Notes: generated from the letters alone by a model not told the origin. 64,000 nucleotides of DNA from IMGVR_UViG_3300007770_001284:186001-250000, one strand, 5' to 3'. Shown: positions 1,980-59,434, numbered from the stretch's first letter. Numbers and translations: made by a program.

Positions 1980-1987
1980 CATATAAT
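1959..1987 (+). promoter_or_regulatory. sigma70-type promoter (ATGTAC-N17-TATAAT)
   Basis: Member of a recurrent promoter family; lies upstream of the glutamine synthetase RBS. Confidence 0.55.
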
Positions 1988-2007
1988 TGGTGTCATCAGG
2001 AGATGAT

Positions 2008-3015
2008 ATGCGAACAGTACATATAGATTATCTTTGGGTTGATGGGTTTGACACACCAGCAATTAGATCAAAGACGAAAGTCCAGCCGCTGAAGAGTGAC
2101 GACGACGAATCTTTTGAATTAGAAATTGAGCCGTGGAATTTTGATGGTTCCTCCACTGGGCAAGCCACCACAGCAGATTCAGAAAGAGTACTTCTTCCTG
2201 CTCGACTTTATCAAGTTTCTCCTGCGCATTATCTTCTTTTATGTGAAGTATGCAATGTTGATGAAACACCCCACGAGACGAATTATCGCGAGACGTTGCG
2301 GATATTTTTAGATGAAAATCCTCAGAAAAATATGTGGGTCGGATTTGAGCAAGAGTTTTTCTTAACCGATCAGAACAAAAATATTTTCTGGCCTGATGGA
2401 GCTGGTGAACCGATCAATGACCCGCGCTATTATTGTTCAGTTGGCGGTGATAGGGTAAAGAAGCGTAATCTGGTAAGGTCTCACGCAACAGGCTGTTGGG
2501 ATATTGGAATTCAGATTGTAGGGTATAATGCAGAGGTGGCTCCAGGCCAGTGGGAATTTCAATGTTTTGCAGAAGACGCATTACGAGCGTGTGATGATTT
2601 GTGGGTTGCTAGATATATGCTATCTTTATTATCTGAAACCGAAGACTTGGGGGTCGATTGGTCACCCAAGCCCCATGCCGGGTGGAATGGTAGCGGTTGC
2701 CACACAAACTTTTCTACAATGGAAATGAGAGATGTTGGTGGAGAGATGGCTTTTAACGAGATATTAGAGAAGATGAAGCAATTTCATCCTTCAACAGTAG
2801 AAAATTACGGAACGGGAAACGATCTCAGACTCGTCGGTGCGTACGAAACATCAAGCTATAATAAATTTACACACGGAATTGGCAGCCGAGATACATCGGT
2901 TAGAATACCCAATTCTGTCCCCAAGAATGAGTGGAAGGGATATCTCGAAGATCGGCGCCCTTCCTCTAATTGCGATCCCTATCGGGTAGTGTTTGAACTG
3001 CTGAAATTTGTGTAA
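2008..3015 (+). CDS. glnII: Glutamine synthetase, type II
   Basis: WNFDGSSTGQA, GQWEFQ, WNGSGCHTNFST, SVRIP, GYLEDRRPSSNCDPY; start moved to ATG after AGGAG. Confidence 0.9.
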   Translation: MRTVHIDYLWVDGFDTPAIRSKTKVQPLKSDDDESFELEIEPWNFDGSSTGQATTADSERVLLPARLYQVSPAHYLLLCEVCNVDETPHETNYRETLRIFLDENPQKNMWVGFEQEFFLTDQNKNIFWPDGAGEPINDPRYYCSVGGDRVKKRNLVRSHATGCWDIGIQIVGYNAEVAPGQWEFQCFAEDALRACDDLWVARYMLSLLSETEDLGVDWSPKPHAGWNGSGCHTNFSTMEMRDVGGEMAFNEILEKMKQFHPSTVENYGTGNDLRLVGAYETSSYNKFTHGIGSRDTSVRIPNSVPKNEWKGYLEDRRPSSNCDPYRVVFELLKFV

Positions 3016-3644: not shown

Positions 3645-3693
3645 TGTAAATTTCGAATTTTTATATTATCATTTTTTGTAGGATGAGAGTATA

Positions 3694-4167
3694 ATGAATT
3701 CGTGGGTTCCACCAAGGTCGCCGTTTGATCTTTTGCAAGAGCGTTTCTGGCCAGATGGTTGGAAAATTCTTGTTACGTGCTTATTGTTAAACCAAACATC
3801 ACGTAAGCAGGTTGAACCGATGATTGAAAGGTTTTTCCAGCGCTATCCTTCCCCAGAAGTGCTAGCACACGCTGATCAAGAAGAATTGTATCATTACATC
3901 AAGGCGCTTGGATTAGCAAACAAGCGGGTAAAAACGCTTAAACGCTTCAGTCAAGAATTTTTAGAGGGGAATTGGACATCTGCGAAGGACCTCTACGGGT
4001 GCGGAAAGTATGCGGATGATACATACCGCATTTTCATCGTTGGAGATTGGCGAGAAACCTCGCCAAATGATCATGCCTTGAGCGATTATCACGGATGGTT
4101 ACAATCTTCTGATAATTCCTATAATAAAAATCGATGTGTGGAGGAAATATGGACACCGAAGAATTGA
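3694..4167 (+). CDS. MBD4-like HhH-GPD mismatch DNA glycosylase (stand-alone catalytic domain)
   Basis: WVPPRSPFDLLQE..WKILV..LLNQTS..LYGCGKYADDTYRIF..PNDHALSDYHGWL aligns by eye with the MBD4 glycosylase domain (WTPPRSPFNLVQE..LHGIGKYGNDSYRIF..PEDHKLNKYHDWL). Confidence 0.85.
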   Translation: MNSWVPPRSPFDLLQERFWPDGWKILVTCLLLNQTSRKQVEPMIERFFQRYPSPEVLAHADQEELYHYIKALGLANKRVKTLKRFSQEFLEGNWTSAKDLYGCGKYADDTYRIFIVGDWRETSPNDHALSDYHGWLQSSDNSYNKNRCVEEIWTPKN

Positions 4168-4388
4168 AATTAACAGATAACGCGATATCACATATCGCCC
4201 AGCTTTTGCAGATGGCAATCCTAACAGGAACAGACATCATGGACAATCTTCGATCTGCGACGTTTGTTGCATATGAAGGGACAGTGGACATCCATCCGGA
4301 TTACCATGAAACGTTCCAGGAGGGAATTCAGCGAATGGTTGAGGCAGTACAAGACGTCGCCTCTGATGGAGAAACCACGGATGAGTGA
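4149..4388 (+). CDS. Hypothetical protein
   Basis: GGAGG RBS before ATG 4149; overlaps neighbours. Confidence 0.6.
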   Translation: MDTEELKLTDNAISHIAQLLQMAILTGTDIMDNLRSATFVAYEGTVDIHPDYHETFQEGIQRMVEAVQDVASDGETTDE

Positions 4389-4767
4389 GACTGTCAGCAA
4401 TGAATTAGCTGAAATTTTTCGTTTACGTGAAAAGTTTATGCGTACATTACGAGCAAAGAAGCCCACCGAGTATCCGACTTGGCCGATTGATCTTTCTGAT
4501 AAAAAGAACCAGCAACATGTTAGAGATATGGCTCTACGTGGTGTTGAAGAAATGTTTGAGGCATTACAACATTTGAAAAACTGGAAGCCTCATCGAGACA
4601 CAGAATTACAAGAAGTTGATAGGGAAGAATTTTTAGAGGAAATTGTTGATGCATTCAATTACTTTTTCTCTGTGCTGGTCCTTGTCGGGGTTAATTCTGA
4701 TGAGCTTTTTGCTGCGTATTGTCGAAAGGATGAAATCATTCATTCGCGATTGGAGACGGGATATTGA
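4381..4767 (+). CDS. All-alpha NTP pyrophosphatase (dimeric dUTPase / T4 gp56 dCTPase-like)
   Basis: EEMFEA..NWKPH..EEIVD acidic metal-binding motifs. Confidence 0.7.
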   Translation: MSETVSNELAEIFRLREKFMRTLRAKKPTEYPTWPIDLSDKKNQQHVRDMALRGVEEMFEALQHLKNWKPHRDTELQEVDREEFLEEIVDAFNYFFSVLVLVGVNSDELFAAYCRKDEIIHSRLETGY

Positions 4768-6591: not shown

Positions 6592-7515
6592 GTGTTTGAA
6601 ATTTATATTCCATTTTATAACAGCCCGTTTTGTGCTGAGTATCAAGCGAAAACGCTGCGAGCATTTATGCGTGACGAAGATGTTACACTAATCTTTGTTG
6701 ATAACAATATGGGGTATCACCCAGAGGCCTCTTTACGAATTATTGAGATTTGCAAAGAGTATGATATAGAGCTTATTGTTAACAATGATCCGCTCTGTGC
6801 GAAATTTCAAGAGGGAATAGCGCAAGGTCATGTATCTACTTCCGATAAGCTGGGCCATACGCTTAATTTGATTTATGGCGTAGTCCAGCAAAGAAAACCT
6901 GATTATTTTGGGTTTCTCGATCAGGATTGTTTCGCGTTTAAGCCCGTTCAGCTTAAAGAATATCTAGATGAGCACGGCGCGTACGGAAAGGTGGTCCCAA
7001 CACATCCGGACGAAAGTCATGTGACACGATCTGGCGAGCATGTGTGGAATTTACATGTGATGTGTAATTTTTTTAAGCGAGATTTTCTTTCTAACATGAA
7101 CGTTAATTTTATGCCAGGGAGCTGGTGCGAGAGGCTTGGTTATGGCTATGATGTCATACTAGACACGGGAGGAGTTAATTGGTGGACAATGTATAAAGAC
7201 ATGGATCGATCTCAGTATGTGCTACCAGAAGAACATTTTCTGTATTATGATGATATTTCTCTCCTTGACCCCAATAATGATAGTCCTACTAAGACTCTTT
7301 ATGAAGTGCTTGACAACAAGTGGGTGCATATGGTCCACGCCGCAAATTCTGGTGCAGCAGCAGACTATCTTAAGCCAAAAACTTCATATATGAAGGGATT
7401 CCTTGATTTTGCGTTATTGGATGCGGGTGCCGTTGGTGCCAGCCCTCGTCCAGAGTCTGACTTCATACCGTCGTACAGAGACCCGAACCGTCATTTTTCT
7501 TTTGAGGGTTCCTAA
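6592..7515 (+). CDS. Putative GT-A fold glycosyltransferase
   Basis: IYIPFYN start strand, FVDNN, FGFLDQD (DxD), LDTGG. Confidence 0.6.
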   Translation: MFEIYIPFYNSPFCAEYQAKTLRAFMRDEDVTLIFVDNNMGYHPEASLRIIEICKEYDIELIVNNDPLCAKFQEGIAQGHVSTSDKLGHTLNLIYGVVQQRKPDYFGFLDQDCFAFKPVQLKEYLDEHGAYGKVVPTHPDESHVTRSGEHVWNLHVMCNFFKRDFLSNMNVNFMPGSWCERLGYGYDVILDTGGVNWWTMYKDMDRSQYVLPEEHFLYYDDISLLDPNNDSPTKTLYEVLDNKWVHMVHAANSGAAADYLKPKTSYMKGFLDFALLDAGAVGASPRPESDFIPSYRDPNRHFSFEGS

Positions 7516-7540
7516 ACCCACAAGATTAATTTACGTTAAG

Positions 7541-7569
7541 CTGAAAAAACCTCTCATACCCTCTATAAT
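7541..7569 (+). promoter_or_regulatory. sigma70-type promoter for dnaE operon (CTGAAA-N17-TATAAT)
   Basis: Family member; followed by GGAGG and GTG 7589. Confidence 0.55.
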
Positions 7570-7588
7570 ACATCACATTGGAGGTTTT

Positions 7589-10500
7589 GTGCGTAAGACT
7601 AAACTGGTTCCCCCAAATAAGTTCATCTCCCTTCATTCTCATGATGGGTTTTCTACTTTTGATGGGCTGGGCTATCCACAAGAGCACATCGACTTTGTCA
7701 TTGAGAACGGCATGGACGGATGGTGTCTCACAAATCATGGTCATATGAATTCATTTGGGCATGCTTTTCTTCATGCGGAAAAGGTCCAGAAGCGTGGGGG
7801 TACCTTTAGGTTTGTCCCTGGTTGTGAAATGTACGTTCATCCAGACCTTGACGCTTGGAAGCTGGATTACGAAATTCGCCAGGCTGCAAAGAAGGGTGAT
7901 AAAGAAGCGTTGTTCTCATTACGAGAACAGCGGGAAGCAATTACGACTCCGCTCACCGCCGTCACAGACCGCGACGATGAAATTATTGATATCGGTAAAG
8001 AAGAAGCTGGGCTTACCGTAGAAAATGAAGAGGAAACGAAGTCTGGAAAGTTTTACGATCCAGTGAAGCGTCGCCATCATTTGGTAGTTTTGCCCAAGAC
8101 CAGCGAGGGTCTCCAACGTTTGTTCCACCTCGTTAGTAGGGGTTACAGAGAGGGCTTCTATAGGTTCCCGCGTGTTGACTATAGGATGCTAAGGGAAGCT
8201 GCTGAGGGAGGCCATCTAATGGTCTCAACAGCATGTATTGGTGGCCCAATCGCATACGAGGTCTTTAGGCACGCTCAACAGGTCGAGTTTGATGATTTAA
8301 AGCATACGCTGCTTGACGATCCGTCATTTCACCGTAACGTTATGACGGGAGTTGGAAATGCGTATCAAGGGCTTGTTGATGCTGTCGGAATTGATGATGT
8401 ACACCTCGAGCTTCAATTTAACAAACTTCCAGCTCAGCATCTAGTAAATCGGGCGATCATTGAATTTGCAAATAACCAGGGGCTTCAAGACAAGCTGGTT
8501 GTTACAACAGATTCTCATTATGCCCGACCAGAGCATTGGCGTGAACGTGAGCTTTATAAAAAGCTGGGATGGCTAAACTATCGTGAATTCGATCCATCGA
8601 AATTGCCCCAATCAAGAGATGATTTGAAGTGCGAGCTTTATCCTAAGAACGCTCCTCAGGTTTGGGATACGTATCTAGAGTCAACAGACGGAATGGATTT
8701 TTACAATGACCAAGTGGTAAAGGACGCAATCGAGCGTCCGCATACGCTTGTTCACGAGGCTATCCAAGACATCGTTCCCGATCGTACCATGAAGCTTCCT
8801 TCTTATGTTGTACCTGAAGGTATGACAGATGATAAGGCTTTGCTTGAGGCATGTAAGAAGGGTCTTGTTGAGCGAGGGTTGGCAAACGATCCAAAATATA
8901 TCGAGCGAATAAAGCAAGAACTAAAAATCATCAAAGATAAGAATTTTTCTCGATATTTCTTAACAATGGAAGCGATTATTAAGATTGCCAAGAAAGCCAT
9001 GCTTGTCGGACCAGGACGCGGTTCGGCCGCGGGTAGTCTAGTTGCCTATGTTCTTAAGTTGACAGACGTTGACCCGTTCGAATACGATCTTATGTTTGGT
9101 CGTTTTCTAAACCCAAGTCGTGAGGGTGCCCCAGATATCGATACCGATGTTGGTGACCGAGATTTGCTTCTCCAGCTAATGAAAGATGAGTGGGGAGATG
9201 AGAATATTATCCCCATCTCGAATTATAATACTTTCAAGCTTAAGTCCCTTGTGAAGGATATCTCTCGTTTTTATGGAATTCCATTTAACGAGGTAAATAA
9301 GGCTCTGTCAACTGTAGATGAAGATGTGAAGCGTGCAGTGTTTAAGCAGGGGACTGATAAAAACCTGTTCGTTCTACTTTACGAAGATGCTCTAGCTCAT
9401 TCTAAGAAGTTTAGAGCGTTTATCGAGGCGCATCCAGAGGTCGCCGCCCCTATCCAGGTTTTGTTTAAACAGAACAAGGCTCTTGGTCGTCATGCAGGAG
9501 GTTGCATTGTCGCAGAAGATATAGCTGAAAGAATGCCGCTGATCAAAGCTCGAGGTGAGCTCCAGACCCCCTGGGCTGAAGGCATGAACTATAAGCATCT
9601 TGAAACATTTGGCTGGATTAAGTTCGATCTTCTCGGTCTTGAAACGCTACGGATCATTCAAAGAACGATTGAGCTGATTCTTCAAAGAAAAGAGGGTATT
9701 GAGGACCCAACATTCGAGCAGGTCTATGAGTGGTTCAATGCAAATATGGATCCCAAGGTTCTTGATATGGATGACCAGCATGTCTATGAGCATGTTTATG
9801 CAGGTGGTCGTTGGGCCGGTATCTTTCAGCTAGCGGGAAGAGGTGCGCAAAACCTCTTTAAGAAAGCCAAGCCCAAGAGCATTATCGATATTGCTACGCT
9901 GACCTCTATCTATCGTCCAGGCCCACTCACTGCGAAGGTCGATAGATTGTATATCAAGGCCAAGAATAATCCTGAGAAGATTGATTATGGGCATCCACTA
10001 ATCAAAGAAGTACTAGAAGAAACATACGGCTTGATAGTCTTTCAAGAGCAGATCATGAAGCTTTGTTCTGTTGTAGCTGGTTTCCCAGAGGAAGAAACAG
10101 ATACTGTTCGTCGCAGTATTATGAAGCGTAAAGCATCAGAGGCTGCAGAAAGTCTTGCTAAGGCTCGATCTATTAAGGAGCAGTTTGTTGCTGGCTCTGT
10201 TAAGAATGGAGTGGATAGTCAGCTTGCAGATGATTTGTACGAAAAGATTCTCTTCTTCGCAGGATACGGCTTCAATAAGTCTCATGCAGTTTGTTACGCT
10301 ATTGACTCTTACTACTGCGCTTGGCTTTTAACATATTTCGAAGAGGAATGGTTATGCGCTTATCTTGAAGCGATGTCGGGTAATGATAAGAAGCGAGCCA
10401 AGGCTTTCGCTGAGGTTAAGACGCTAGGGTATCGAGTTGTGCCCCTTGATATTAATTACGCGACCAAGGATTGGACAATTCTTGAAGGTAAGAAATTTAT

Positions 10501-11203
10501 GCCTTCTCTTTTGTCTTGTAAGGGTATTGGTGAATCTGCAATCGACGAACTTGTGACTAGTCGACCGTATAAGCATATTGACGACTTGTTGTGGGATGAT
10601 ATCGGAAAGTGGAGGCATTCCAAATTTAACAAGCGTGCTTTGGAGGCGTTAATCAATATTCAAGCATTCGAGTCTATGGATCTTATTGGTGACAACAAGA
10701 CATTTGAAAGCTACAAACAAATGCATGAAGTGTTGATTGGTAAAAATTCTGAAATCAAGAAATGGACAAAGAAGGATCCAGAACGTGGTCGTAGAAACTT
10801 TAACGAGGCGTTGCTTGATACTCAGGGAGCTGGTGTCTGGACACGACGAGAGCGAGTTGAGAATAACGTGCGACATTTCGGTTCATTTAATGCAGCTACA
10901 CTAGTCCCAAGCGAGGTTCAAGAAAAGCTTGCTAAAATGGACATTTTTCCCATTGATGAAATTAATGGTCATGACTTGTATTGGTTCCTCGTGTCAGATG
11001 TGAAGCCGAAGCTAACAAAGAACAAGCGGCCCTATCTACTGGTTACAGCAACTGCATTGTCTGGTCAGACCTATCGGATGTTTTGCTGGAGCTGGGATGG
11101 TGAAACCGAACTGCCGCTTTACAGTCTGTGCGTAGCTGAAGTGAAGAAAAATGATTTTGGATATCAAACTTCTATGAGAAAAATCAAAGTTCTTCAGTTA
11201 TGA
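7589..11203 (+). CDS. dnaE: DNA polymerase III alpha subunit (family C)
   Basis: PHP motifs HSH..DG, TNHG, GCEMY, TDSHY; GPGRGSAAGSLVAY; PDIDTD; KFDLLGL; YGFNKSHA; real start is probably GTG 7589 after GGAGG. Confidence 0.95.
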   Translation: MRKTKLVPPNKFISLHSHDGFSTFDGLGYPQEHIDFVIENGMDGWCLTNHGHMNSFGHAFLHAEKVQKRGGTFRFVPGCEMYVHPDLDAWKLDYEIRQAAKKGDKEALFSLREQREAITTPLTAVTDRDDEIIDIGKEEAGLTVENEEETKSGKFYDPVKRRHHLVVLPKTSEGLQRLFHLVSRGYREGFYRFPRVDYRMLREAAEGGHLMVSTACIGGPIAYEVFRHAQQVEFDDLKHTLLDDPSFHRNVMTGVGNAYQGLVDAVGIDDVHLELQFNKLPAQHLVNRAIIEFANNQGLQDKLVVTTDSHYARPEHWRERELYKKLGWLNYREFDPSKLPQSRDDLKCELYPKNAPQVWDTYLESTDGMDFYNDQVVKDAIERPHTLVHEAIQDIVPDRTMKLPSYVVPEGMTDDKALLEACKKGLVERGLANDPKYIERIKQELKIIKDKNFSRYFLTMEAIIKIAKKAMLVGPGRGSAAGSLVAYVLKLTDVDPFEYDLMFGRFLNPSREGAPDIDTDVGDRDLLLQLMKDEWGDENIIPISNYNTFKLKSLVKDISRFYGIPFNEVNKALSTVDEDVKRAVFKQGTDKNLFVLLYEDALAHSKKFRAFIEAHPEVAAPIQVLFKQNKALGRHAGGCIVAEDIAERMPLIKARGELQTPWAEGMNYKHLETFGWIKFDLLGLETLRIIQRTIELILQRKEGIEDPTFEQVYEWFNANMDPKVLDMDDQHVYEHVYAGGRWAGIFQLAGRGAQNLFKKAKPKSIIDIATLTSIYRPGPLTAKVDRLYIKAKNNPEKIDYGHPLIKEVLEETYGLIVFQEQIMKLCSVVAGFPEEETDTVRRSIMKRKASEAAESLAKARSIKEQFVAGSVKNGVDSQLADDLYEKILFFAGYGFNKSHAVCYAIDSYYCAWLLTYFEEEWLCAYLEAMSGNDKKRAKAFAEVKTLGYRVVPLDINYATKDWTILEGKKFMPSLLSCKGIGESAIDELVTSRPYKHIDDLLWDDIGKWRHSKFNKRALEALINIQAFESMDLIGDNKTFESYKQMHEVLIGKNSEIKKWTKKDPERGRRNFNEALLDTQGAGVWTRRERVENNVRHFGSFNAATLVPSEVQEKLAKMDIFPIDEINGHDLYWFLVSDVKPKLTKNKRPYLLVTATALSGQTYRMFCWSWDGETELPLYSLCVAEVKKNDFGYQTSMRKIKVLQL

Positions 11204-11248: not shown

Positions 11249-12280
11249 TTGTTTGCTGGAAAATTTGAAAACTTCACTGAATGTTATCTATCATTGATTG
11301 ATGATGTCTATAATAATTCGACGTATTTATCTGCACCGAGAGGTCAGAAAATTAGGGAAAAACTTGGAGTATCTTTTACGATTGAGAATCCTCGTCACCG
11401 CATCCCCTACGTTGCGGGAAGAAAGTTTAGTGTGACGTATATGGTTGCCGAATTGTTGTGGTATCTTTCTGCAAATAATAAAACTGAATGGATCTCGAAG
11501 TACTCAGCTTTCTGGAAAGATATTAGTGATGATGGTGTGACAGCAAACTCTGCTTACGGTGCTCGGCTTTTTGCCCCTAATGAGAAGATTGCCAATGGTA
11601 GATTTACGCAATGGCAATATGTCGTAAACGAACTAAGAAGAGATCCAGACTCCCGCAGGGCAGTAATGCACTTGAGAATGCCGGCAGACGGAATTGATGC
11701 GAAGTTAGATGTACCATGCACACTTACGCTGCAATTTTTTATTCGAGATAATGAGCTGCATATGATTGTTAACATGCGAAGCTCTGATTTGATTTTTGGA
11801 ATTGCTTATGACATCCCTGCTTTTACATTTTTTCAAGAAATTTTAGCTGGACAATTGGGTGTCGAGCTTGGATCTTATACTCACATGAGCAATTCTCTTC
11901 ACATTTACGAACGTCATTTTGAGATGGTCGAGACGATTTTAAGCGAAAAATGTCTAGCTAAAACGCGCAAGCTAACTGATATTCATGGTCCAATGCCAGC
12001 GATTGACGCTGCTGGGTGCAACCAGCAGGCATTAACATACTGGATTAAGAAGCTAATGACATTTGAGAAAGCACTTTCTGATGCTACAACTCCTCGAGAT
12101 GCCGTTCGTCTGTGGACTGCTTATTTTGCTTATGCTAATAATTCTGATCAAATATGGGCTGACTGGGCTCGGGTCTTAGCTGCACAAAGAGCAAGAAGAC
12201 TTGGCGAGCCAGCAGAAGCAAACGAAATTCAAGCTATCACAGATTTTAGTGGATATTCATTTAATATCAGGAGTCGTTAA
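11249..12280 (+). CDS. Thymidylate synthase paralogue, predicted dCMP hydroxymethylase/hydroxylase
   Basis: SRRA, PCT (catalytic Cys), MRSSDLIFGIAYD with Asp at the position of E. coli ThyA Asn177 (as in T4 gp42), SLHIYERH. Confidence 0.8.
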   Translation: MFAGKFENFTECYLSLIDDVYNNSTYLSAPRGQKIREKLGVSFTIENPRHRIPYVAGRKFSVTYMVAELLWYLSANNKTEWISKYSAFWKDISDDGVTANSAYGARLFAPNEKIANGRFTQWQYVVNELRRDPDSRRAVMHLRMPADGIDAKLDVPCTLTLQFFIRDNELHMIVNMRSSDLIFGIAYDIPAFTFFQEILAGQLGVELGSYTHMSNSLHIYERHFEMVETILSEKCLAKTRKLTDIHGPMPAIDAAGCNQQALTYWIKKLMTFEKALSDATTPRDAVRLWTAYFAYANNSDQIWADWARVLAAQRARRLGEPAEANEIQAITDFSGYSFNIRSR

Positions 12281-13392
12281 TGACGTATCAGTATGATTAT
12301 CTTATTGTCGGTGCTGGAATATTCGGCGCGACGTTTGCTAGAGAAATGACTGACGCGGGCAAAAAGTGCCTTGTCATTGATAAGCGGAAGCACATCGGTG
12401 GTAACGTGTATTCTGAAAAGCGAAATGGCATTGACGTACACGTATATGGTGCCCATATTTTTCATACAAACAATGATCGAATTTGGGAGTACGTAAATCG
12501 ATTTACGACATTCAACAATTACATCAATAAACCGAAGGTACGCTTTGGCGATCGCATTTTTTCGTTTCCCATTAATCTAATGACGCTTCATCAACTATGG
12601 GGTGTTATGGACCCCGCTGAAGCGAAAGCAAAGCTTAATGAAGTGAGGATTCATTGTGAGAATCCTGAAAATTTAGAAGACTGGATCCTTTCCCAGGTTG
12701 GGCGAGAAGTATACGAAACGTTCATCCGTGGTTATACAATGAAGCAATGGCAACGCGACCCGCGGGAACTCCCTTCGTCTATTATCAAGAGACTTCCCAT
12801 TCGTCTTACATTTGATGAAAATTATTTTTTCGACAAGTACCAAGGAATTCCTGTTGACGGCTACACTGCAATGGTTGATAATATGCTGGAAGGAATTGAG
12901 GTGAAGACAGGTATTGATTATTTTGAAAACAGAGCCGTCTTTATTCCTGCTGCAAAGAAGACTGTGTTCACTGGTAAAATTGATGAATTTTTTGGGTTTG
13001 TTCATGGTGAGCTTGAGTATCGCACTTTGCGGTTCGAGCATGAAGAGCTGATGGGTGACTTTCAAGGAAACGCTGTAGTGAACTATACTTCACCAGATGT
13101 CCCCTTTACTCGGATTGTAGAACACAAGCATTTTTTGCCTGAATCGGCTGGAAAACTGGATAACACGATTATCACAAGAGAGTATTCCGCAGAGTATGAC
13201 AGGAGCAAAACGCCATATTATCCTATCGGCGATGCGAAGAATATAGCAATGTATAAGAAGTATTGCGAGATGGCTGAATCGGCAAAGGATGTCATTTTCG
13301 GGGGCCGGCTAGCAGAGTACAAATACTACGATATGCACCAAGTTATCGGTTCAGCACTTGTAAAAGCGAAAAGAGAACTTGAAAATAAATGA
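12280..13392 (+). CDS. glf: UDP-galactopyranose mutase
   Basis: IVGAGIFG, HIGGN, YGAHIFHT, YFxDKYQGIP, TRIVEHKHF, PYYP, GRLAEYKYYDMHQ. Confidence 0.95.
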   Translation: MTYQYDYLIVGAGIFGATFAREMTDAGKKCLVIDKRKHIGGNVYSEKRNGIDVHVYGAHIFHTNNDRIWEYVNRFTTFNNYINKPKVRFGDRIFSFPINLMTLHQLWGVMDPAEAKAKLNEVRIHCENPENLEDWILSQVGREVYETFIRGYTMKQWQRDPRELPSSIIKRLPIRLTFDENYFFDKYQGIPVDGYTAMVDNMLEGIEVKTGIDYFENRAVFIPAAKKTVFTGKIDEFFGFVHGELEYRTLRFEHEELMGDFQGNAVVNYTSPDVPFTRIVEHKHFLPESAGKLDNTIITREYSAEYDRSKTPYYPIGDAKNIAMYKKYCEMAESAKDVIFGGRLAEYKYYDMHQVIGSALVKAKRELENK

Positions 13393-13407
13393 AGATTTGG
13401 CTATAAT
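13379..13407 (+). promoter_or_regulatory. sigma70-type promoter (TTGAAA-N17-TATAAT)
   Basis: Near consensus; GGAG RBS follows. Confidence 0.65.
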
Positions 13408-13430
13408 AAAATAGCAAATTTGGAGAATAG

Positions 13431-14483
13431 ATGAGAGTTTTGTATAGTTTTTGGGGGTTTATTACTCCGCTTGAAAAAAATAGTATTGTAAATACACCTG
13501 ATGGTGAGCGTGGGAACAGGGTGGACTTTGTTACCGAGCTTATGAAGCGTGGCCACGTACCGATTCAACTTCAAAAGATGCGGGATATCGAGCGATATCC
13601 GGGTGTTGAATATGATGACGTAGGGTTTCCCGATGGTGATATTCTTTATGTCGAATGGCGTTGGCCCACTTGGAAGAACAGCGGCGATGACATTTTCGAG
13701 TCTGATTATACACGCCAGTGTAAGGTTCTTGACTATTATCATGATAAAGGAATACCCATCATTATTCATGACGGTGATTTGAAGATGACCCCTGAAGAAG
13801 AGCTCCGCTGGCCGAATGCAGTTCTAGCTGATGCGTGCGTGAACTCGCGACAGCAAACGAGGGAGCGTATTACCATTCCGTGGTGCAATTATATGAAACG
13901 CTATCTTGACCCTGTCGAGTATTCCTACAATTACACGTACGTTGGGAACAATTATGAGAGAGACGATCAATTTCAGAAGTATTACATAAGTTCAAGTCGC
14001 TCGCTTCGAGATCGAGGAATTCAAACGTCTATTTACGGTAATTGGTTACAAAAGTCTCCAGAGCGAAAAGACCCAAAAGAATTGCTGCAGGGAACTCCCT
14101 ATGTTGCCTTTGGCCCACGCTTGGCGTACAAAGATATTTTCGGAGTCTTGAATTCTTCTATCACTGTTACCCATATCACAAAAGACGCGTATACGCCGTA
14201 TGGTAATATTACGGGGAGATTTTTTGAAGCGATCAAAAGCAACGTACCAGCGTTAGTCCCAATAGAATTTAAGCACGCTCTTCCTGTTGGACTAAATGGT
14301 CAACTTGTGGTGGAATCAACTCGTGATGTAATAAGCAAAGTAAACTGGCTTTCATCGTTGAATGCCGAGCAAAGAAAAGCACTAGTAGACGAGCAGGAAG
14401 AGGCTCTTCGAACAGTGATTGATCCCAGACCAGAATACAGGGTAGATCTTCTTGAGCATATTTTGGGAGATTACCACGGATGA
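13431..14483 (+). CDS. GT-B fold glycosyltransferase, possibly DNA/nucleotide-modifying (beta-glucosyltransferase-like)
   Basis: YTYVGNNYER, IYGNW, ITGRFFEAI C-terminal GT-B motifs; context between glf and dNMP kinase. Confidence 0.65.
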   Translation: MRVLYSFWGFITPLEKNSIVNTPDGERGNRVDFVTELMKRGHVPIQLQKMRDIERYPGVEYDDVGFPDGDILYVEWRWPTWKNSGDDIFESDYTRQCKVLDYYHDKGIPIIIHDGDLKMTPEEELRWPNAVLADACVNSRQQTRERITIPWCNYMKRYLDPVEYSYNYTYVGNNYERDDQFQKYYISSSRSLRDRGIQTSIYGNWLQKSPERKDPKELLQGTPYVAFGPRLAYKDIFGVLNSSITVTHITKDAYTPYGNITGRFFEAIKSNVPALVPIEFKHALPVGLNGQLVVESTRDVISKVNWLSSLNAEQRKALVDEQEEALRTVIDPRPEYRVDLLEHILGDYHG

Positions 14484-15034
14484 AGGTAGCATTCATTGGA
14501 CCCGACATGACAGGAAAGTCAAATATTGCTGAAGAACTGTCTCGTCAGACAGACGTTCCTGTGTTCAAAAATTCCAGTGAATGGAAAACGCAACTTGATA
14601 GTCCAGATTATTTTCTTAATCTACTCAAATATGGTGGCCCATTTTTAATGGACTTTATTCGCCAAACAGGCGTATCAGTTATTTTAGACCGTTTTTATCC
14701 GTGTGAGTATGTCTACGCAGAAGCATTCGAGCGAGAGACAGATATGAATGCAATTTTGTGGATGGACGAGAATTTTTCTGAAGTAGGTGGGAAGTTTATC
14801 ATATGTTTGCGGAAAGACTACTCTGGTCTGGTCGATGATCAATATCCTGACCAATTACCACCTGAAATGTTGAAAAAGTTAGACATTTATTATCGTAAGT
14901 TTGCTGAGCGTACAAGTTGTGATTATCTGATTTTAGAGACAGATGACATGGACTTGAACAAGCAGGTAAAAGAGATTAAAATATTTTTAGGAATTAGAGA
15001 AATGGAAGCGGAGGATTTTTGTGTATACTCGTAA
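14480..15034 (+). CDS. Deoxynucleoside monophosphate (thymidylate-type) kinase
   Basis: P-loop GPDMTGKS; VILDRF. Confidence 0.75.
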   Translation: MKVAFIGPDMTGKSNIAEELSRQTDVPVFKNSSEWKTQLDSPDYFLNLLKYGGPFLMDFIRQTGVSVILDRFYPCEYVYAEAFERETDMNAILWMDENFSEVGGKFIICLRKDYSGLVDDQYPDQLPPEMLKKLDIYYRKFAERTSCDYLILETDDMDLNKQVKEIKIFLGIREMEAEDFCVYS

Positions 15035-16025
15035 AGCGTTAGTTACAGGGTGCTGTGGATTTATCGGCGGTCATCTTACGAAGATGTTAGTTGAGCAAGG
15101 GTGGGATGTAACTGGTGTCGACGATTTGTCAAATGGCGACCCCTCTGTATTAGACGGTATAGATATTAGGTGTATCCCACCTGCTCTTTTAGTGGCTTAC
15201 GAAACACAGGCCGTCGATGCTAGTAAGACGCTGGTTATTACTGGTGATTTTGCTCATGAATATGTTCTTATGAAAATTGCTGAAGGTGAATTTGATGTAA
15301 TTTTCCATCTGGCTGCCAATCCGCGTGTGGAGTTTTCTGTTAAGAATCCCGCATCGACTACCCATACAAACGTTCAAAAAACAATTGAATTAATGACAGC
15401 AGCTACCGGAAAAATTGATCGCTTTGTTTTTGCATCATCTTCGTCCAGCTATGGCAATACCGACCAATTTCCAACAAGAGAATCTTCTCCCACAAATCCA
15501 GAGTCACCTTACGGACTACAGAAGCTTGTCGTGGAACAATTTGGTGAATTGTACAACCGATTGTACAGTATGGATTTTGTTGCACTTCGGTTTTTCAATG
15601 TGTACGGCCCTGGCCAGGTGGGAGACTCTCCTTATTCAACTGCAATCGCTGCGTGGTGTACACGTCTTAAGAAAAATGAGCCCCTTCGAAGTGATGGAGA
15701 CGGAGAACAACGGCGTGATATGGTGTATGTAAATGATGTTGCAAGTGCTATGGTGACAGCCGCTGATCACCCCGATTCGTTAGGTTACGCAATGTATAAT
15801 GTTGCAACAGGCGTAGCTGTTACTAACAATGAAATTCTTAAGACACTTAAAGAGTATTTTCCTGAGATGGTTATCAATCATGCTCCCGCTCGCCCAGGCG
15901 ACGTAAAATTTACCTTGGGTTCTATAGATAAAATTAATGAGGAGCTCGGATGGATTCCCCGAAAGGAGTTTTGGGCTGGGCTCAGAAGCACGTTAAAGTG
16001 GTGGGGCTTATTGGACGATGAATAG
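15021..16025 (+). CDS. NAD-dependent nucleotide-sugar epimerase/dehydratase (GalE/WbpP-like)
   Basis: TGCCGFIG, HLAA, ASSSSSYG, SPYGLQK (YxxxK), LRFFNVYGP, DGEQRRD. Confidence 0.9.
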   Translation: MYTRKALVTGCCGFIGGHLTKMLVEQGWDVTGVDDLSNGDPSVLDGIDIRCIPPALLVAYETQAVDASKTLVITGDFAHEYVLMKIAEGEFDVIFHLAANPRVEFSVKNPASTTHTNVQKTIELMTAATGKIDRFVFASSSSSYGNTDQFPTRESSPTNPESPYGLQKLVVEQFGELYNRLYSMDFVALRFFNVYGPGQVGDSPYSTAIAAWCTRLKKNEPLRSDGDGEQRRDMVYVNDVASAMVTAADHPDSLGYAMYNVATGVAVTNNEILKTLKEYFPEMVINHAPARPGDVKFTLGSIDKINEELGWIPRKEFWAGLRSTLKWWGLLDDE

Positions 16026-16472: not shown

Positions 16473-17312
16473 ATGAGCTCGATCGACCCAAATTCAGTAG
16501 ATGTAGTGATTTACCACGCTGATTGCACTGACGGTTACGGGGCTGCGTATTCAGCATGGAAGCTGTTGGGAAAACGTGCCGAGTTTTATCCGTGTAAGCA
16601 CGGTAATCCCCCCCCAAAAGTAAAGGGAAAGAACGTTGTTATTTTAGACTTCTCGTTTACGAATGCAGTTACAAAAAAGATGATAAAGTCTGCAAAAAAC
16701 CTCATCGTGATTGACCACCATAAATCTGCAATGGTAGAATTACATGATATAACAAATACACATTTTGACATGACTAAGTCGGGTGCAATGCTGGCTTGGG
16801 AATTTTTTCATCCTGGAAAAGATGCTCCCAAGTTTATTCAATATATTCAAGATCGTGATCTTTGGAAGTGGGAGCTCCCATACTCAAGGGAGTTCGCAGC
16901 AGCGTTTGATATGGTCCCCTTTGAGTTTGAGGAATTTGAAAAGTTTGAAGATGATTCGGTGTTTGATGACGCTGTTAAACGCGGTTCGTATATACTTGCT
17001 TATTCTAAGACAGTTGTAAAGAAGGTTTGCGAGAAAGCTGAGCCAAGAAAGTTTGAAGGGAAGGATGTTCTTGTTGTGAACGCTTCTCACTGGATGTCAG
17101 AAATCGGAGCAAGACTTTCACCAGATTGTGATTTTGCATTGATTTGGTACTGGGATCATGAAGATAAGGTTACGAAGGTCAGCTTACGTGCATTTCACGA
17201 TTCTGTTGACGTATCTGAAATTTCGAAAAAGTTTGGTGGCGGTGGTCACAAAAAAGCAGCAGGATTTACGCTTCCTAAGGAGACTCACATTGAAGAACTC
17301 TTTGACACTTGA
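16473..17312 (+). CDS. DHH/DHHA1 phosphoesterase (nanoRNase-like)
   Basis: YHADCTDG, IDHH, DRDLW, SLR, FGGGGHKKAAGF. Confidence 0.9.
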   Translation: MSSIDPNSVDVVIYHADCTDGYGAAYSAWKLLGKRAEFYPCKHGNPPPKVKGKNVVILDFSFTNAVTKKMIKSAKNLIVIDHHKSAMVELHDITNTHFDMTKSGAMLAWEFFHPGKDAPKFIQYIQDRDLWKWELPYSREFAAAFDMVPFEFEEFEKFEDDSVFDDAVKRGSYILAYSKTVVKKVCEKAEPRKFEGKDVLVVNASHWMSEIGARLSPDCDFALIWYWDHEDKVTKVSLRAFHDSVDVSEISKKFGGGGHKKAAGFTLPKETHIEELFDT

Positions 17313-17886
17313 TAGAACGCCAAAGTTTGATATTGTTTATTTAGATCCGCCATGGGACTACAAAGGCCAGCTACAACATAGTAAACCTGGAATGGGTGAT
17401 ACAGGTGGGGCTCGCAAGCATTATGGTACGCTCAAACTAAAACAGCTTAAGCAGTTTCCAATGCAGGAGCTTCTTAACGAAGACTCGCTTGTCTTTATGT
17501 GGGTAACAAACCCACACCTCGATCAGGGCATTGAGCTGCTTAAGAGCTGGGGGCTGAAATATTCTACAGTCGCCTTTGTGTGGAACAAGATGCGGGTTAA
17601 TCCTGGGTTTTATACCATGTCGCAGTGCGAGCTTTGCCTTGTTGGAAAAAATGGCAAGATTCCTCGACCTCGAGGTGCCAGAAACGTGCGACAATATCTA
17701 GAGCACCTCCGTGAAGAGCATAGCAAAAAGCCGGATGAAGTTAGGGCTCGCATTGAGCAGATGTTTCCAGACCAGACGAAGGTTGAACTGTTTGCTCGCC
17801 ACCAGTTACCTGGATGGTCAGTTTGGGGAGATGAAGTCGAAAGCTGTGACAGTCTTAAAGGGTACTTGAATGAGCTCGGATGGTAG
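17302..17886 (+). CDS. MT-A70 family adenine methyltransferase
   Basis: FDIVYLDPPW, FMWVT, CELCLVG, HSKKP, VELFAR, GWSVWGDE; start probably TTG 17302. Confidence 0.9.
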   Translation: MTLDRTPKFDIVYLDPPWDYKGQLQHSKPGMGDTGGARKHYGTLKLKQLKQFPMQELLNEDSLVFMWVTNPHLDQGIELLKSWGLKYSTVAFVWNKMRVNPGFYTMSQCELCLVGKNGKIPRPRGARNVRQYLEHLREEHSKKPDEVRARIEQMFPDQTKVELFARHQLPGWSVWGDEVESCDSLKGYLNELGW

Positions 17887-18298
17887 ACCGCCATGGGATG
17901 AAATCTGGATGGGGTTTGCTCATTCAATAGCTCGTCGTTCCTATGATCCGCGACATCAGGTTGGTGCTGTTGTTGTTACGAAAGAAAATACACAAGTGTT
18001 AGCTGTTGGGTATAACGGGAATTATACAGGCGGACCCAATGAGGCAGAGTCAGAAGTTCCGGGTGAGTCTGGAATGATTCATGCTGAAATTAACGCGCTG
18101 CTTAAATGTGATTACAATATTCTTGCGGAAAAGATAATGTACGTTACACTAAGTCCGTGTCGAATGTGCGCAAAAGCGATGGTAAATGGTGGGATTAGCG
18201 AAGTCATTTATAACGAGCAGTATCGTGATATTTCTGGGCTGGATCTATTGAGGGCCGCTGGAGTAAAAGTAAGGCGCTATTCCTATAAGAAATACTAG
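17870..18298 (+). CDS. dCMP deaminase
   Basis: RPPWD, QVGA, GYNG, HAEINA, SPCRMC. Confidence 0.9.
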   Translation: MSSDGRPPWDEIWMGFAHSIARRSYDPRHQVGAVVVTKENTQVLAVGYNGNYTGGPNEAESEVPGESGMIHAEINALLKCDYNILAEKIMYVTLSPCRMCAKAMVNGGISEVIYNEQYRDISGLDLLRAAGVKVRRYSYKKY

Positions 18299-32410: not shown

Positions 32411-32579
32411 GATTTTGGTAGAAATGCGCGCAAAAGGATTGATATCTGAGACTGAGATTGTCTATAAAGAGGGTGATCTTTATGTCGCAAAGGATGTTGT
32501 GACAAATTCAAAAAGAATTATTGAGTATGGAGGCCCAGTCCGTGAGGGCCGCGGCGGTAAGAGGCTGCTCAAAGGATGA
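32385..32579 (+). CDS. Small hypothetical protein
   Basis: Overlapping operon member ending RLLKG; not GroES-like. Confidence 0.5.
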   Translation: MEQGTLPPEILVEMRAKGLISETEIVYKEGDLYVAKDVVTNSKRIIEYGGPVREGRGGKRLLKG

Positions 32580-42164: not shown

Positions 42165-42509
42165 TGGTGGAGGCGGCGGGAGTCGAACCCGCGTCCAAAG
42201 CAGTTTAGGGATCAAGTCATTCACAGGTTTAGACAGTTTTTCTAAACTGACAAATCTTCCGCTGGTGAAACCCCCCTGCTCGCGGATACAAGGTTCGAGC
42301 ATTATTTTATTTCAGTGATGCTACTTCACTTAGCCTAAATTGGATAGATGGTTTTAGGCAACCACCCGATTACGCAGCTAGGGCGTATTCGAAGTGATTG
42401 TTGTTATTGGCAACTATCTTTTTTGAAACCGCGATTTAGGTCTGCTGTTTCCTGAGACCACCTGCACTCTTATACTCCTTTGCTACCCTGTCGAAGCCAT
42501 ATCGCCCCC
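42165..42509 (-). ncRNA. ssrA: tmRNA; tag peptide ANNNNHFEYALAA (42411-42370)
   Basis: 5' GGGGGCG pairs with 3' CGCCUCC-ACCA including G3:U70; T-arm GCGGG-UUCGACU-CCCGC; UAGUU before resume codon GCC; tag ends YALAA-stop. Confidence 0.95.
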
Positions 42510-58350: not shown

Positions 58351-58418
58351 CTCAATTTGGTCAGAGCAACGGTCTCATAAACCGTGGGTTCCGGGTTCAA
58401 GTCCCGGTCGCCCTACCA
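58341..58418 (+). tRNA. tRNA with CAT anticodon, probably Ile2 (lysidine-modified)
   Basis: Cloverleaf: AGGGCGA/TCGCCCT, ACGGT-CTCATAA-ACCGT, TTCAAGT loop, A-CCA; no initiator GGG/CCC stem; directly upstream of tilS. Confidence 0.9.
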
Positions 58419-58425
58419 CTTAAAA

Positions 58426-59049: not shown

Positions 59050-59071
59050 ATTTATCTTCAAGGGAGAAACA

Positions 59072-59263: not shown

Positions 59264-59275
59264 GAGTGAAGAAAA

Positions 59276-59422: not shown

Positions 59423-59434
59423 TTGCCTAATTTG

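What the first reader, a model, noticed from the sequence alone, without database searches (positions are those of the whole stretch)
3694..4167. Stand-alone MBD4-like glycosylase in a phage with predicted modified cytosine
Seen: near-colinear similarity to the catalytic domain of eukaryotic MBD4 (WxPPRSPF, LxGxGKY, PxDHxL with the catalytic Asp). Known: MBD4 excises T, U and 5-hmU opposite G, the deamination products of 5mC, C and hmC. Inference: the phage repairs deamination of its modified cytosines, and the family may bear on the origin of eukaryotic MBD4.
Basis: partly seen in the sequence, partly recalled or inferred. Interest (0 to 1): 0.65.

Follow-up and report, generated by a model that had tools for sequence, protein, structure and literature searches.

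The report
Phage MBD4-type mismatch DNA glycosylase
A large uncultured bacterial virus that very probably replaces cytosine with hydroxymethylcytosine carries a stand-alone copy of the catalytic domain of the animal and plant repair enzyme MBD4, probably to repair its deaminated modified cytosines. Outside eukaryotes this enzyme type was found almost only in such phages.

Summary
ORF 3694..4167 (+), 157 aa, aligns without gaps over 137 residues to the human and mouse MBD4 glycosylase domain (E 1e-39, about 44% identity). The next best solved structure is Mig at 8e-6. An AlphaFold model (pLDDT 90) superposes on MBD4 at 1.0 Å. The catalytic Asp and the thymine/uracil-reading Gln and Tyr are invariant in the family.

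The genome is a jumbo phage of at least 255 kb. Its thymidylate-synthase homologue carries the dCMP-hydroxymethylase signature (ThyA L143D, D169, N177D). It sits beside sugar-nucleotide enzymes and a likely DNA glycosyltransferase.

All 25 MBD4-like-bearing phage records checked in which a TS homologue was found carry a cytosine-specific one. These include Xp12, which has 5mC DNA. Half of the related loci have Fpg/Nei directly downstream.

The family was nearly absent from 800 sampled bacterial genomes. Its nearest relatives are pan-eukaryotic MBD4. The tree does not resolve who gave the gene to whom.

Viral forms carry a distinct active-site triad: Q/L/C468, R471 and A562, where most eukaryotes have K/R, G and K/M. 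Function is inferred and has not been assayed. I rate it a new variant of a known kind, with interest about 0.6.

The parts
3680..3689 (+). Shine-Dalgarno-like AGGATGAGAG, 4 nt upstream of the ATG
   Evidence: Read directly from the sequence.
3694..4167 (+). MBD4-type HhH-GPD DNA glycosylase, 157 aa, stand-alone. Key residues: Q15 (= human Q449), N33/Q34/T35 (= N467/R468/T469), R37 (= G471), L72/L74 (= L506/L508), G102-x-G104-K105-Y106 (HhH hairpin, Y = Y540), D126 (= catalytic D560), A128 (= K562).
4134..4388 (+). Small acidic ORF (84 aa, pI 4.05) overlapping the glycosylase stop. Homologues lie downstream of the glycosylase in 33 of 61 related loci and accompany the NTP-PPase in all 23 loci that have it. 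Function unknown.
4264..4767 (+). All-alpha NTP pyrophosphohydrolase (MazG / dimeric-dUTPase-like), a candidate dCTPase/dUTPase. The ORF is open from 4264. The real start is probably the ATG at 4381, which gives 128 aa as in relatives.
7403..11203 (+). DnaE-type replicative polymerase (PHP, Pol III alpha, finger and HHH_6 domains)
11249..12280 (+). Thymidylate-synthase homologue with the dCMP-hydroxymethylase signature (ThyA L143D, C146, D169, N177D). It is the only ThyA-family gene in the 255-kb record.
   Evidence: criteria from PMC13326640.
12280..13392 (+). UDP-galactopyranose mutase (GLF, E 1.3e-76)
13431..14483 (+). Unannotated 350-aa protein. Language-model features place it with viral glycosyltransferase clusters, including the T4 beta-glucosyltransferase family. 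This is a lead only.
   Evidence: no Pfam or PHROG hit.
14480..15034 (+). Nucleotide-kinase-like protein (weak thymidylate-kinase PHROG match, P-loop), a candidate hm-dCMP kinase
15021..16025 (+). NAD-dependent nucleotide-sugar epimerase (GalE-like)
17870..18298 (+). dCMP deaminase

Best explanation
The ORF encodes a catalytically competent, monofunctional, MBD4-type helix-hairpin-helix DNA glycosylase of a jumbo bacteriophage.

The phage very probably makes 5-hydroxymethyl-dCMP with a thymidylate-synthase homologue and builds hmC into its DNA. The hmC is likely glycosylated further. Hydrolytic or enzymatic deamination of such a cytosine gives 5-hydroxymethyluracil, or thymine in 5mC phages, opposite G. 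The host uracil-DNA glycosylase does not remove these bases.

Proposed steps:
1. The phage enzyme flips the mispaired pyrimidine into a pocket. The pocket reads the uracil/thymine Watson-Crick edge with Gln15, Tyr106 and a main-chain amide.
2. It checks the orphan G with main-chain carbonyls.
3. It cleaves the N-glycosidic bond with Asp126.
4. The abasic site is then processed. In about half of the relatives a phage Fpg/Nei encoded directly downstream would do this. This phage record has no such gene, so host enzymes would act.
5. The gap is refilled with the modified dCTP.

Shown here: family identity, fold, conserved residues and the genomic associations. Inferred: the substrates, the repair role and the DNA modification itself.
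For: **Identity and fold**
- E 1e-39 and gapless to MBD4; family profile 1e-55.
- The model superposes on MBD4 at 1.0 Å.

**Residues**
- Q449, N467, T469, L506, R512, G536, G538, K539, Y540, L563 and Y566 are invariant or nearly so in 120 homologues, and D560 is Asp in 119 of 120. Q449, N467, Y540 and D560 are invariant in 76 viral loci.
- In MBD4, Q449A is inactive. Gln and Tyr restrict the pocket to T/U derivatives. The orphan G is read by main-chain atoms (PMC3479182, PMC3458566).
- Tyr106 occupies the register of the Nth lyase Lys120, and there is no Fe-S Cys motif. This points to a monofunctional enzyme.

**DNA modification**
- The TS homologue is closest to the CMP hydroxymethylase MilA (6e-43, against TS at 1e-23).
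- It has the L143D / D169 / N177D pattern.
- A Glf, a BGT-like protein, a kinase-like protein and an epimerase lie next to it.

**Association**
- All 23 IMG/VR records with an MBD4-like gene in which a TS homologue was found carry a D/D/D-type one, across three TS sub-lineages.
- Xp12 (5mC DNA) has the glycosylase two genes upstream of its N177D TS homologue.
- The TS homologue of cyanophage S-TIM54 is also N177D.
- For scale, only about 5% of cultured phage records match any ThyA-family protein.

**BER cassette**
- Fpg/Nei lies immediately downstream in 31-32 of 61 dereplicated loci.
Against: - No biochemical data exist for any member.
- Three positions that line the active site of mammalian MBD4 differ: Arg468 to Gln, Gly471 to Arg, Lys562 to Ala. 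Substrate range may therefore differ. K536A slows mouse MBD4 5-10 fold.
- Two near-complete relatives (G022 at 100%, G033 at 87%) have neither a ThyA-family gene nor a C5-methyltransferase. The enzyme is therefore not strictly tied to C5-modified cytosine.
- This record has no Fpg, no Xth-type AP endonuclease and no true ThyA or ThyX, but it is only about 75% complete.
- The background frequency of D-type TS genes among comparable jumbo phages was not measured.
- The jumbo-phage records are related to one another, so they are not 23 independent observations.
Confidence: 0.62

Rival explanations
1. It is a general phage-encoded G:U / G:T mismatch glycosylase that maintains a very large genome whatever its base modification. 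In effect it replaces or supplements host UDG. The link to cytosine modification would be a by-product of sitting in the nucleotide-metabolism module.
For: - Two near-complete relatives lack any ThyA-family gene and any C5-methyltransferase.
- The gene neighbours are generic nucleotide-metabolism genes: RNR, ThyX, NTP-PPase and the polymerase.
- MBD4 also removes U opposite G.
Against: - Every MBD4-like-bearing phage record in which a TS homologue was found has a cytosine-specific one, in at least three unrelated phage groups.
- The family is missing from most cultured phages: 16 of 50,697 records matched, two of them an archaeal virus whose match is annotated as a MutY-type glycosylase.
- Uracil alone would be handled by host Ung.
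Confidence: 0.17
2. The changed active-site triad (Q/L/C468, R471, A562) marks a changed substrate. One possibility is excision of bulky glycosylated 5-hmU. Another is a different base altogether, such as misincorporated or unfinished modification intermediates. That would be quality control of the hypermodification pathway rather than repair of deamination.
For: - The triad is nearly fixed in viral forms and co-varies.
- Lys562 stacks on the flipped base and touches the 5hmU hydroxyl, and Gly471 C-alpha lies 4 Å from C5.
- Xp12, with plain 5mC, keeps Lys562.
- A glycosylation module lies nearby.
Against: - The residues that read O2/N3/O4 of uracil-type bases are invariant. The base is therefore still a T/U derivative, which overlaps the best explanation.
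- Gln at 468 is also the state in Nth and MutY, so it need not signal a new specificity.
Confidence: 0.13
3. It is an offensive or competitive enzyme. It would attack host DNA, or the DNA of competing phages that contain 5-hmU or uracil, in analogy to the bacterial defence glycosylases.
For: HhH-superfamily glycosylases have repeatedly been recruited for conflict (bioRxiv 10.1101/2025.10.29.685425).
Against: - The MBD4 scaffold needs a G opposite the target, and the residues that read it are kept.
- The gene sits with replication and nucleotide genes and with Fpg/Nei, not with anti-defence genes.
- A PADLOC defence-library scan was not run.
Confidence: 0.05

Closest known systems
Eukaryotic MBD4 (MED1) C-terminal glycosylase domain (human 4e9e/6vjw, mouse 4evv/4ew0)
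   Same: - Same fold: RMSD about 1.0 Å, 43-44% identity, gapless over 137 residues.
- Catalytic Asp560, base-reading Gln449 and Tyr540, intercalating Leu506/Leu508 and the HhH hairpin are all kept.
- No Fe-S cluster and no lyase Lys.
   Different: - No N-terminal methyl-CpG-binding domain or linker; the protein is 157 aa and stands alone.
- Arg468 finger becomes Gln, Gly471 becomes Arg, and the Lys562 lid becomes Ala, family-wide.
- It is encoded by a bacteriophage next to nucleotide-modification genes.
MBD4-like proteins of Xp12-group phages (Xp12 QNN97216, FMYAK-P1, AXL_1 'ENDO3c domain protein', Donnerlittchen 'endonuclease III') and cyanophage S-TIM54
   Same: - Stand-alone MBD4-type glycosylases in phages that carry an N177D (cytosine-specific) TS homologue.
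- In Xp12 the two genes are separated by one gene.
   Different: - Only 31-39% identical to the window protein.
- Xp12 keeps Lys562 and has Leu468 and Trp471.
- The Xp12 TS homologue has Asn, not Asp, at the L143 position. This is consistent with methylation rather than hydroxymethylation.
Mig.MthI / MutY / endonuclease III (prokaryotic HhH-GPD glycosylases)
   Same: - Same superfamily, HhH motif and catalytic Asp.
- Mig is also a G:T/U mismatch glycosylase.
- Gln at the plug position (Nth Q41).
   Different: - Sequence relation is weak: 8e-6 to 0.04 against 1e-39 for MBD4.
- TIGR01083 nth scores 39.5 bits against a cut-off of 211.7.
- No [4Fe-4S] Cys cluster and no Lys120.
- Fold TM is 0.6 or less.
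Phage DNA hypermodification clusters (T4 gp42/gp56/gp1/BGT; Rhizobium phage RL38J1 with UDP-galactopyranose mutase; PMC13326640)
   Same: - The window has a TS homologue with N177D and L143D, a kinase-like gene, an NTP-PPase, a UDP-Galp mutase, an epimerase and a BGT-like protein.
- This is the same logic as the known clusters.
   Different: - D169 is kept, so the product is predicted to be 5hm-dCMP and not the 5-hydroxy-dCMP of RB69/RL38J1.
- tblastn found no MBD4-like match in the T4 or RL38J1 groups, and PMC13326640 does not mention MBD4.

Membership tests
MBD4-type glycosylase domain (HhH-GPD superfamily) | HhH-GPD fold, closest to MBD4 rather than to Nth, MutY, Mig, AlkA or Ogg | tested here: met
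   - Pfam HhH-GPD 1.7e-13.
- PDB phmmer: MBD4 1e-39 against Mig 8e-6.
- Family profile: 1.4e-55 against 7e-13.
- Foldseek: TM 0.91-0.95 and RMSD 1.0 Å to MBD4, against 0.6 or less for the others.
MBD4-type glycosylase domain (HhH-GPD superfamily) | Catalytic Asp (human D560) in the P-x-D-H-x-L motif | tested here: met
   D126 in the query. Asp in 119 of 120 homologues and in 76 of 76 viral loci.
MBD4-type glycosylase domain (HhH-GPD superfamily) | Thymine/uracil-edge recognition by Gln449 and Tyr540 | tested here: met
   Q15 and Y106 in the query, invariant in 120 homologues and 76 viral loci. Their roles are taken from PMC3479182 and PMC3458566.
MBD4-type glycosylase domain (HhH-GPD superfamily) | Monofunctional enzyme: no lyase Lys in the HhH hairpin and no [4Fe-4S] cluster | tested here: met
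   - Tyr106 stands in the G-x-G-[RK]-K register of Nth K120.
- The query has only three Cys (29, 103, 148) and no C-x6-C-x2-C-x5-C motif.
MBD4-type glycosylase domain (HhH-GPD superfamily) | Arg finger (human R468) that fills the gap left by the flipped base | tested here: not met
   - Gln34 in the query.
- Q, L, M or C in about 97% of viral forms and K or R in 113 of 136 eukaryotic forms.
- Gln is also the state in Nth and MutY.
MBD4-type glycosylase domain (HhH-GPD superfamily) | Lys lid (human K562, mouse K536) that stacks on the flipped base | tested here: not met
   Ala128 in the query. Ala in 119 of 120 homologues. Eukaryotes have K (69) or M (36) of 136.
MBD4-type glycosylase domain (HhH-GPD superfamily) | Excision of T, U and 5hmU opposite G | not testable with these tools
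   Needs an enzyme assay.
Full-length eukaryotic MBD4 | N-terminal methyl-CpG-binding domain joined to a C-terminal glycosylase domain | tested here: not met
   - The ORF is 157 aa and holds the glycosylase domain only.
- 127 of 160 further proteins fetched from the all-lengths search and cluster look-ups carry the domain at the C-terminus of a longer protein.
- Every long hit whose source was looked up is eukaryotic.
Endonuclease III (Nth, TIGR01083) | Score above the curated cut-off, Lys120 and a Fe-S cluster | tested here: not met
   39.5 bits against a cut-off of 211.7. No Lys120 equivalent and no Cys cluster.
dCMP hydroxymethylase (TS homologue at 11249..12280, context gene) | ThyA N177D (dCMP substrate), L143D/E (water access) and D169 retained (not a 5-hydroxy-dCMP synthase) | tested here: met
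   - Alignment with E. coli ThyA, Aeromonas phage 31 gp42 and the Xp12 TS homologue.
- Criteria from PMC13326640.
- Best PDB match is MilA, 5.6e-43.
- Product not assayed.

The most novel reading that the evidence does not exclude
MBD4-type glycosylases arose, or at least diversified, in bacteriophages as the repair arm of C5-modified-cytosine DNA, and the eukaryotic MBD4 catalytic domain descends from such a phage gene. It would have been fused later to an MBD domain. On this reading the viral Q/L-R-A active site, which lacks the Lys lid, is adapted to excise bulky products such as glycosylated 5-hmU opposite G. No known enzyme has that activity.
Probability: 0.15. Interest if true: 0.85.

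Novelty: new variant of a known kind. Interest (0 to 1): 0.62.

Why it matters
- **A repair arm for modified phage DNA.** Phages that replace cytosine with 5mC, hmC or glycosyl-hmC lose the protection of host uracil-DNA glycosylase, because deamination no longer gives uracil. A dedicated phage glycosylase for G:T or G:5hmU would be the missing repair arm of these modification systems. In the papers I could search, none describes one.
- **Distribution.** MBD4-type enzymes were found in eukaryotes and in bacterial viruses, but almost never in the cellular prokaryotes sampled. This makes the origin of a central enzyme of eukaryotic 5mC maintenance a concrete, testable question.
- **Practical use.** The viral clade offers small (about 140 aa) natural variants with an altered pocket. 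These may serve as reagents for detecting deaminated modified cytosines.

Tried and rejected
- **Near-identical DNA in cultured phages.** None found.
- **PHROGs on the glycosylase.** No family matched.
- **Single-sequence scan of genome contigs.** Nothing found. The profile scan found 3 loci, of which at least one sits on a probable misbinned phage contig.
- **Single-sequence AlphaFold model.** Unusable at pLDDT 43. Replaced by the alignment-based model.
- **Direction of transfer between phages and eukaryotes.**
  - The FastTree topology put viral forms as a basal grade.
  - The careful mixture-model tree left the base unresolved.
  - AU tests accept both eukaryote monophyly (p 0.63) and viral monophyly (p 0.66).
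  - I therefore make no claim of direction.
- **Own-genome searches.** No Fpg/Nei, Xth-type AP endonuclease, C5 DNA methyltransferase or ThyX was found in a record that is about 75% complete.
- **C5-methyltransferase route in relatives that lack a TS homologue.** Not found.
- **Literature.** Seven searches found no description of a phage MBD4-like glycosylase. The one 'MBD4 + phage + jumbo' hit was an accession number.
- **Ordinary endonuclease III, rejected.** The score is far below the cut-off, and there is no Fe-S cluster and no lyase Lys.
- **Eukaryotic virus or contamination, rejected.** The record carries a tmRNA, a DnaE-type polymerase, ClpP, GroEL and a peptidoglycan amidase. The same protein occurs on 15 contigs.
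- **Not used.** Read-laying tools, other genetic codes, the complex predictor and the PADLOC defence library.
- **Big all-lengths protein search.** Used once, because the word search is length-limited and the evolutionary claim needs relatives of every length.

Full report
**1. The observation**

The window holds an ORF at exactly 3694..4167 on the + strand (157 aa, ATG start). A purine-rich AGGATGAGAG stretch lies just upstream.

- phmmer against all PDB sequences gives E 1.1e-39. The match is one gapless stretch from query 3-139 to the human and mouse MBD4 glycosylase domain. The next families are Mig.MthI at 7.7e-6 and MutY at about 2e-5.
- Pfam finds HhH-GPD at 1.7e-13.
- NCBIfam nth scores 39.5 bits against a cut-off of 211.7.
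- A profile of 64 family members scores MBD4 at 1.4e-55, Mig at 7e-13 and endonuclease III at 7e-9.
- An AlphaFold2 model built with that alignment (pLDDT 90.3) matches 16 MBD4 chains. TM is 0.91-0.95 by target, RMSD is about 1.0 Å and identity is 43-44%. MutY and Mig reach TM 0.6 or less.

**2. What the genome is**

The window is bases 186001-250000 of a single 254,743-bp IMG/VR virus record, judged about 75% complete. It is a bacterial virus. The evidence is:

- a tmRNA (124 bits) and four tRNAs
- a DnaE-type polymerase, ClpP and GroEL
- a peptidoglycan amidase with a PG-binding domain, and a tRNA nucleotidyltransferase

No cultured phage is close at the DNA level.

**3. Is cytosine modified?**

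The record has one ThyA-family gene, at 11249..12280.

- Its best solved relative is the CMP 5-hydroxymethylase MilA (5.6e-43). Thymidylate synthases score 1e-23 or weaker and T4 dCMP hydroxymethylase 7e-17.
- A 2026 paper (PMC13326640) gives the diagnostic positions in E. coli ThyA numbering:
  - N177D sets dCMP as substrate.
  - L143D/E admits water and gives hydroxymethylation.
  - D169N marks 5-hydroxy-dCMP synthases.
- Aligned with E. coli ThyA, a T4-type gp42 and the Xp12 enzyme, the window protein has D143, D169 and D177. This is the gp42/MilA pattern.
- Downstream lie a UDP-galactopyranose mutase (1.3e-76), an unannotated 350-aa protein, a kinase-like protein, a GalE-like epimerase and a dCMP deaminase.
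- Language-model features group the unannotated protein with viral T4 beta-glucosyltransferase-type clusters. This is a lead only.
- An all-alpha NTP pyrophosphohydrolase follows the glycosylase.

The prediction is therefore 5-hydroxymethylcytosine DNA, probably glycosylated. This rests on sequence alone.

**4. The family and its conserved residues**

The word search found 172 relatives, nearly all 138-157 aa and 56-70% identical, from marine metagenomes. Human numbering equals query numbering plus 434.

- Q449, N467, T469, L506, R512, G536, G538, K539, Y540, L563 and Y566 are invariant or nearly so. D560 is Asp in 119 of 120.
- In MBD4, Gln449 and Tyr540 read O2/N3/O4 of thymine or 5hmU, and Q449A is inactive. 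The orphan guanine is read by main-chain carbonyls of residues 468 and 506. Asp560 is catalytic (PMC3479182, PMC3458566).
- Tyr106 stands where Nth has its lyase Lys120, and there is no Fe-S cysteine motif. The enzyme should therefore be monofunctional.

Three positions differ systematically from mammalian MBD4:

| Human position | Role in MBD4 | State in the query and viral forms |
|---|---|---|
| Arg468 | finger that fills the gap left by the flipped base | Gln in the query; Q, L or C in nearly all viral forms |
| Gly471 | C-alpha lies 4 Å from C5 of the flipped base | Arg |
| Lys562 | lid that stacks on the base and touches the 5hmU hydroxyl; K536A is 5-10 fold slower | Ala |

- The three positions co-vary. 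Viral forms are Q/L/C-R-A, and most eukaryotes are K/R-G-K/M.
- A haptophyte clade and Prasinoderma carry the viral triad.
- Xp12 has L-W-K.
- Gln at 468 is also the state in Nth and MutY.

**5. Associations that bear on function**

(a) Among cultured phages, tblastn finds relatives only in these groups:

- the Xp12 group (Xp12, FMYAK-P1, MET13-T1, Ep029, YB23, AXL_1, DoCa6, Donnerlittchen)
- cyanophage S-TIM54
- an archaeal virus, with a shorter match whose feature is annotated as a MutY-type glycosylase in one of its two records

Xp12 is the classical phage with all cytosine replaced by 5-methylcytosine (stated in PMC7653180). In Xp12 the gene lies two genes upstream of a block of TS homologue, dCMP deaminase and DHFR, and that TS homologue is N177D. 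The TS homologue of S-TIM54 is also N177D.

(b) A profile scan of IMG/VR found 152 viral contigs with a relative.

- Of 36 large records examined, 23 had a ThyA-family gene. Every one of the 23 has a D143/D169/D177 copy, spread over three distinct TS sub-lineages. One record also has a true ThyA.
- Most of the records without one are fragments, 18-52% complete.
- G022 (100% complete) and G033 (87%) lack both a TS homologue and a C5-methyltransferase. The link is strong but not absolute.
- As a rough scale, only 2,756 of 50,697 cultured phage records match any ThyA-family protein.

(c) A neighbourhood census was run over 61 dereplicated loci.

- An Fpg/Nei glycosylase/AP-lyase gene lies immediately downstream in 31-32 loci.
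- A small acidic ORF lies downstream in 33, and the NTP-PPase in 23.
- ThyX, ribonucleotide reductase and ClpP recur upstream.

A monofunctional mismatch glycosylase followed by an AP lyase is a minimal base-excision cassette. This record itself has no Fpg, no Xth and no ThyX in the 75% that is held.

**6. Mechanism proposed**

Deamination of hmC, or of 5mC or glycosyl-hmC, opposite G gives 5hmU or T. Host Ung does not remove these bases (established knowledge).

1. The phage enzyme flips out the base.
2. It reads the base as a uracil derivative and checks the opposite G.
3. It cleaves the glycosidic bond with Asp126.
4. The abasic site goes to the phage Fpg/Nei where one is present, and otherwise to host enzymes.
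5. The gap is refilled from the modified dNTP pool.

The missing Lys lid and the Arg at 471 may open or re-line the C5 side of the pocket for larger substituents. That step is speculation. I put the repair reading at about 0.62.

The rivals are:

- a modification-independent G:U / G:T repair enzyme (0.17)
- a changed substrate or pathway quality control (0.13)
- an offensive role (0.05)

**7. Relation to eukaryotic MBD4**

The all-lengths search of 1.84 billion representatives gave 2,652 hits, 140 of them at E 1e-30 or better.

- The best 150 are 37-57% identical (nearly all 37-52%) and are mostly long proteins with the domain at the C-terminus.
- Look-ups show animals, land plants, green and brown algae, a haptophyte, a glaucophyte, Amoebozoa and a heterolobosean. 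The domain is therefore pan-eukaryotic.

In cellular prokaryotes the type is almost unfound.

- A pattern-limited scan of 185,579 species genomes gave three loci.
  - One sits on a 305-kb 'Methylococcaceae' MAG contig that carries a D/D/D TS homologue and is probably a misbinned jumbo phage.
  - The other two are nearly identical genes binned into a Saprospirales MAG and a Promethearchaeota MAG.
- A profile search of 400 sampled genomes in each of two phyla found none besides the centre genomes, plus one marginal partial hit.

The phylogeny does not settle direction.

- A careful IQ-TREE analysis (65 rows, mixture model) separates the MBD4-type clade from Nth and MutY at 100/97 support.
- It recovers a main eukaryotic clade at 92/88 and leaves the base unresolved.
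- AU tests accept both eukaryote monophyly (p 0.63) and monophyly of all viral and stand-alone forms (p 0.66).

Phage forms are thus the closest non-eukaryotic kin of MBD4, but the direction of transfer is open.

**8. Novelty and verdict**

[quoted passage not shown] Cultured-phage homologues are annotated 'hypothetical', 'ENDO3c' or 'endonuclease III'. I found no paper that describes a phage MBD4-type glycosylase or links it to cytosine modification.

I rate it a new variant of a known kind. It is a stand-alone, phage-borne form with a distinct active-site triad. It is tied to cytosine-modifying TS homologues and often paired with Fpg/Nei.

**Limits**

- No biochemistry exists for any member.
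- The viral records are related to one another and often fragmentary.
- No measured background rate is available for D-type TS genes.
- The phylogeny rests on about 144 columns.

Noticed in passing
window 11249-16025: A DNA hypermodification cluster: a dCMP-hydroxymethylase-type TS homologue, a UDP-galactopyranose mutase, an unannotated BGT-like protein, a kinase-like protein and a GalE-like epimerase. The content resembles the RL38J1 cluster of PMC13326640, but D169 is retained, so the base is predicted to be hmC, possibly carrying galactose or galactofuranose.
   Followed up: partly
window 42165-42509 (-): A full-length tmRNA gene in a phage genome (Rfam RF00023, 124 bits; ARAGORN tag peptide ANNNNHFEYALAA). 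Four tRNAs (Met, Lys, Asn, Arg) lie at 58341-63408.
   Followed up: partly
window 4134-4388 (+): A small acidic ORF (84 aa, pI 4.05) overlaps the end of the glycosylase gene. Homologues occur in 33 of 61 related loci and in all 23 loci that have the NTP-PPase. It has no Pfam match, and its size and charge recall DNA-mimic inhibitors such as Ugi. Untested.
   Followed up: partly
proteins P0142, P0184, P0195, P0202 and P0176: Haptophyte (Phaeocystis) and Prasinoderma MBD4-like proteins carry the viral-type triad Q/C468-R471-A562. They do not join the main eukaryotic clade in the careful tree. This may reflect separate exchange between marine viruses and algae.
   Followed up: partly
L022-L024 ('Woeseia sp.' MAG contig); L028/L134 ('Methylococcaceae TMED69', 305-kb contig): These MAG contigs have phage-like gene content. 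The first has an M15 peptidase, a tubulin-like gene, GIY-YIG and DnaJ. The second has a D/D/D TS homologue. Both are probably jumbo-phage contigs binned into bacterial MAGs.
   Followed up: partly
L029 (Saprospirales MAG) and L030 (Promethearchaeota MAG): Nearly identical MBD4-like genes (branch lengths 0 and 0.009) sit in MAGs of two different domains. This suggests a shared mobile or viral contig, or a binning artefact.
   Followed up: no
window 1987-3015, 21-623, 32576-34159, 45296-46933, 17158-17886: Host-like auxiliary genes in the phage: a glutamine-synthetase-like protein, ClpP, GroEL, a tRNA nucleotidyltransferase and an MT-A70 adenine methyltransferase.
   Followed up: no
L131 (cyanophage S-TIM54, record 145421-146233): The TS homologue of S-TIM54 has N177D with Cys at the L143 position. 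This hints at a dCMP methylase and 5mC DNA in a cultured cyanophage. Its MBD4-like protein aligns Val at the Gln449 position.
   Followed up: partly
window 6592-7515 and 7403-11203: The listed ORFs overlap by 113 bases. The DnaE-type polymerase probably starts downstream of 7403. The 307-aa upstream ORF has only a faint GT2 match.
   Followed up: no
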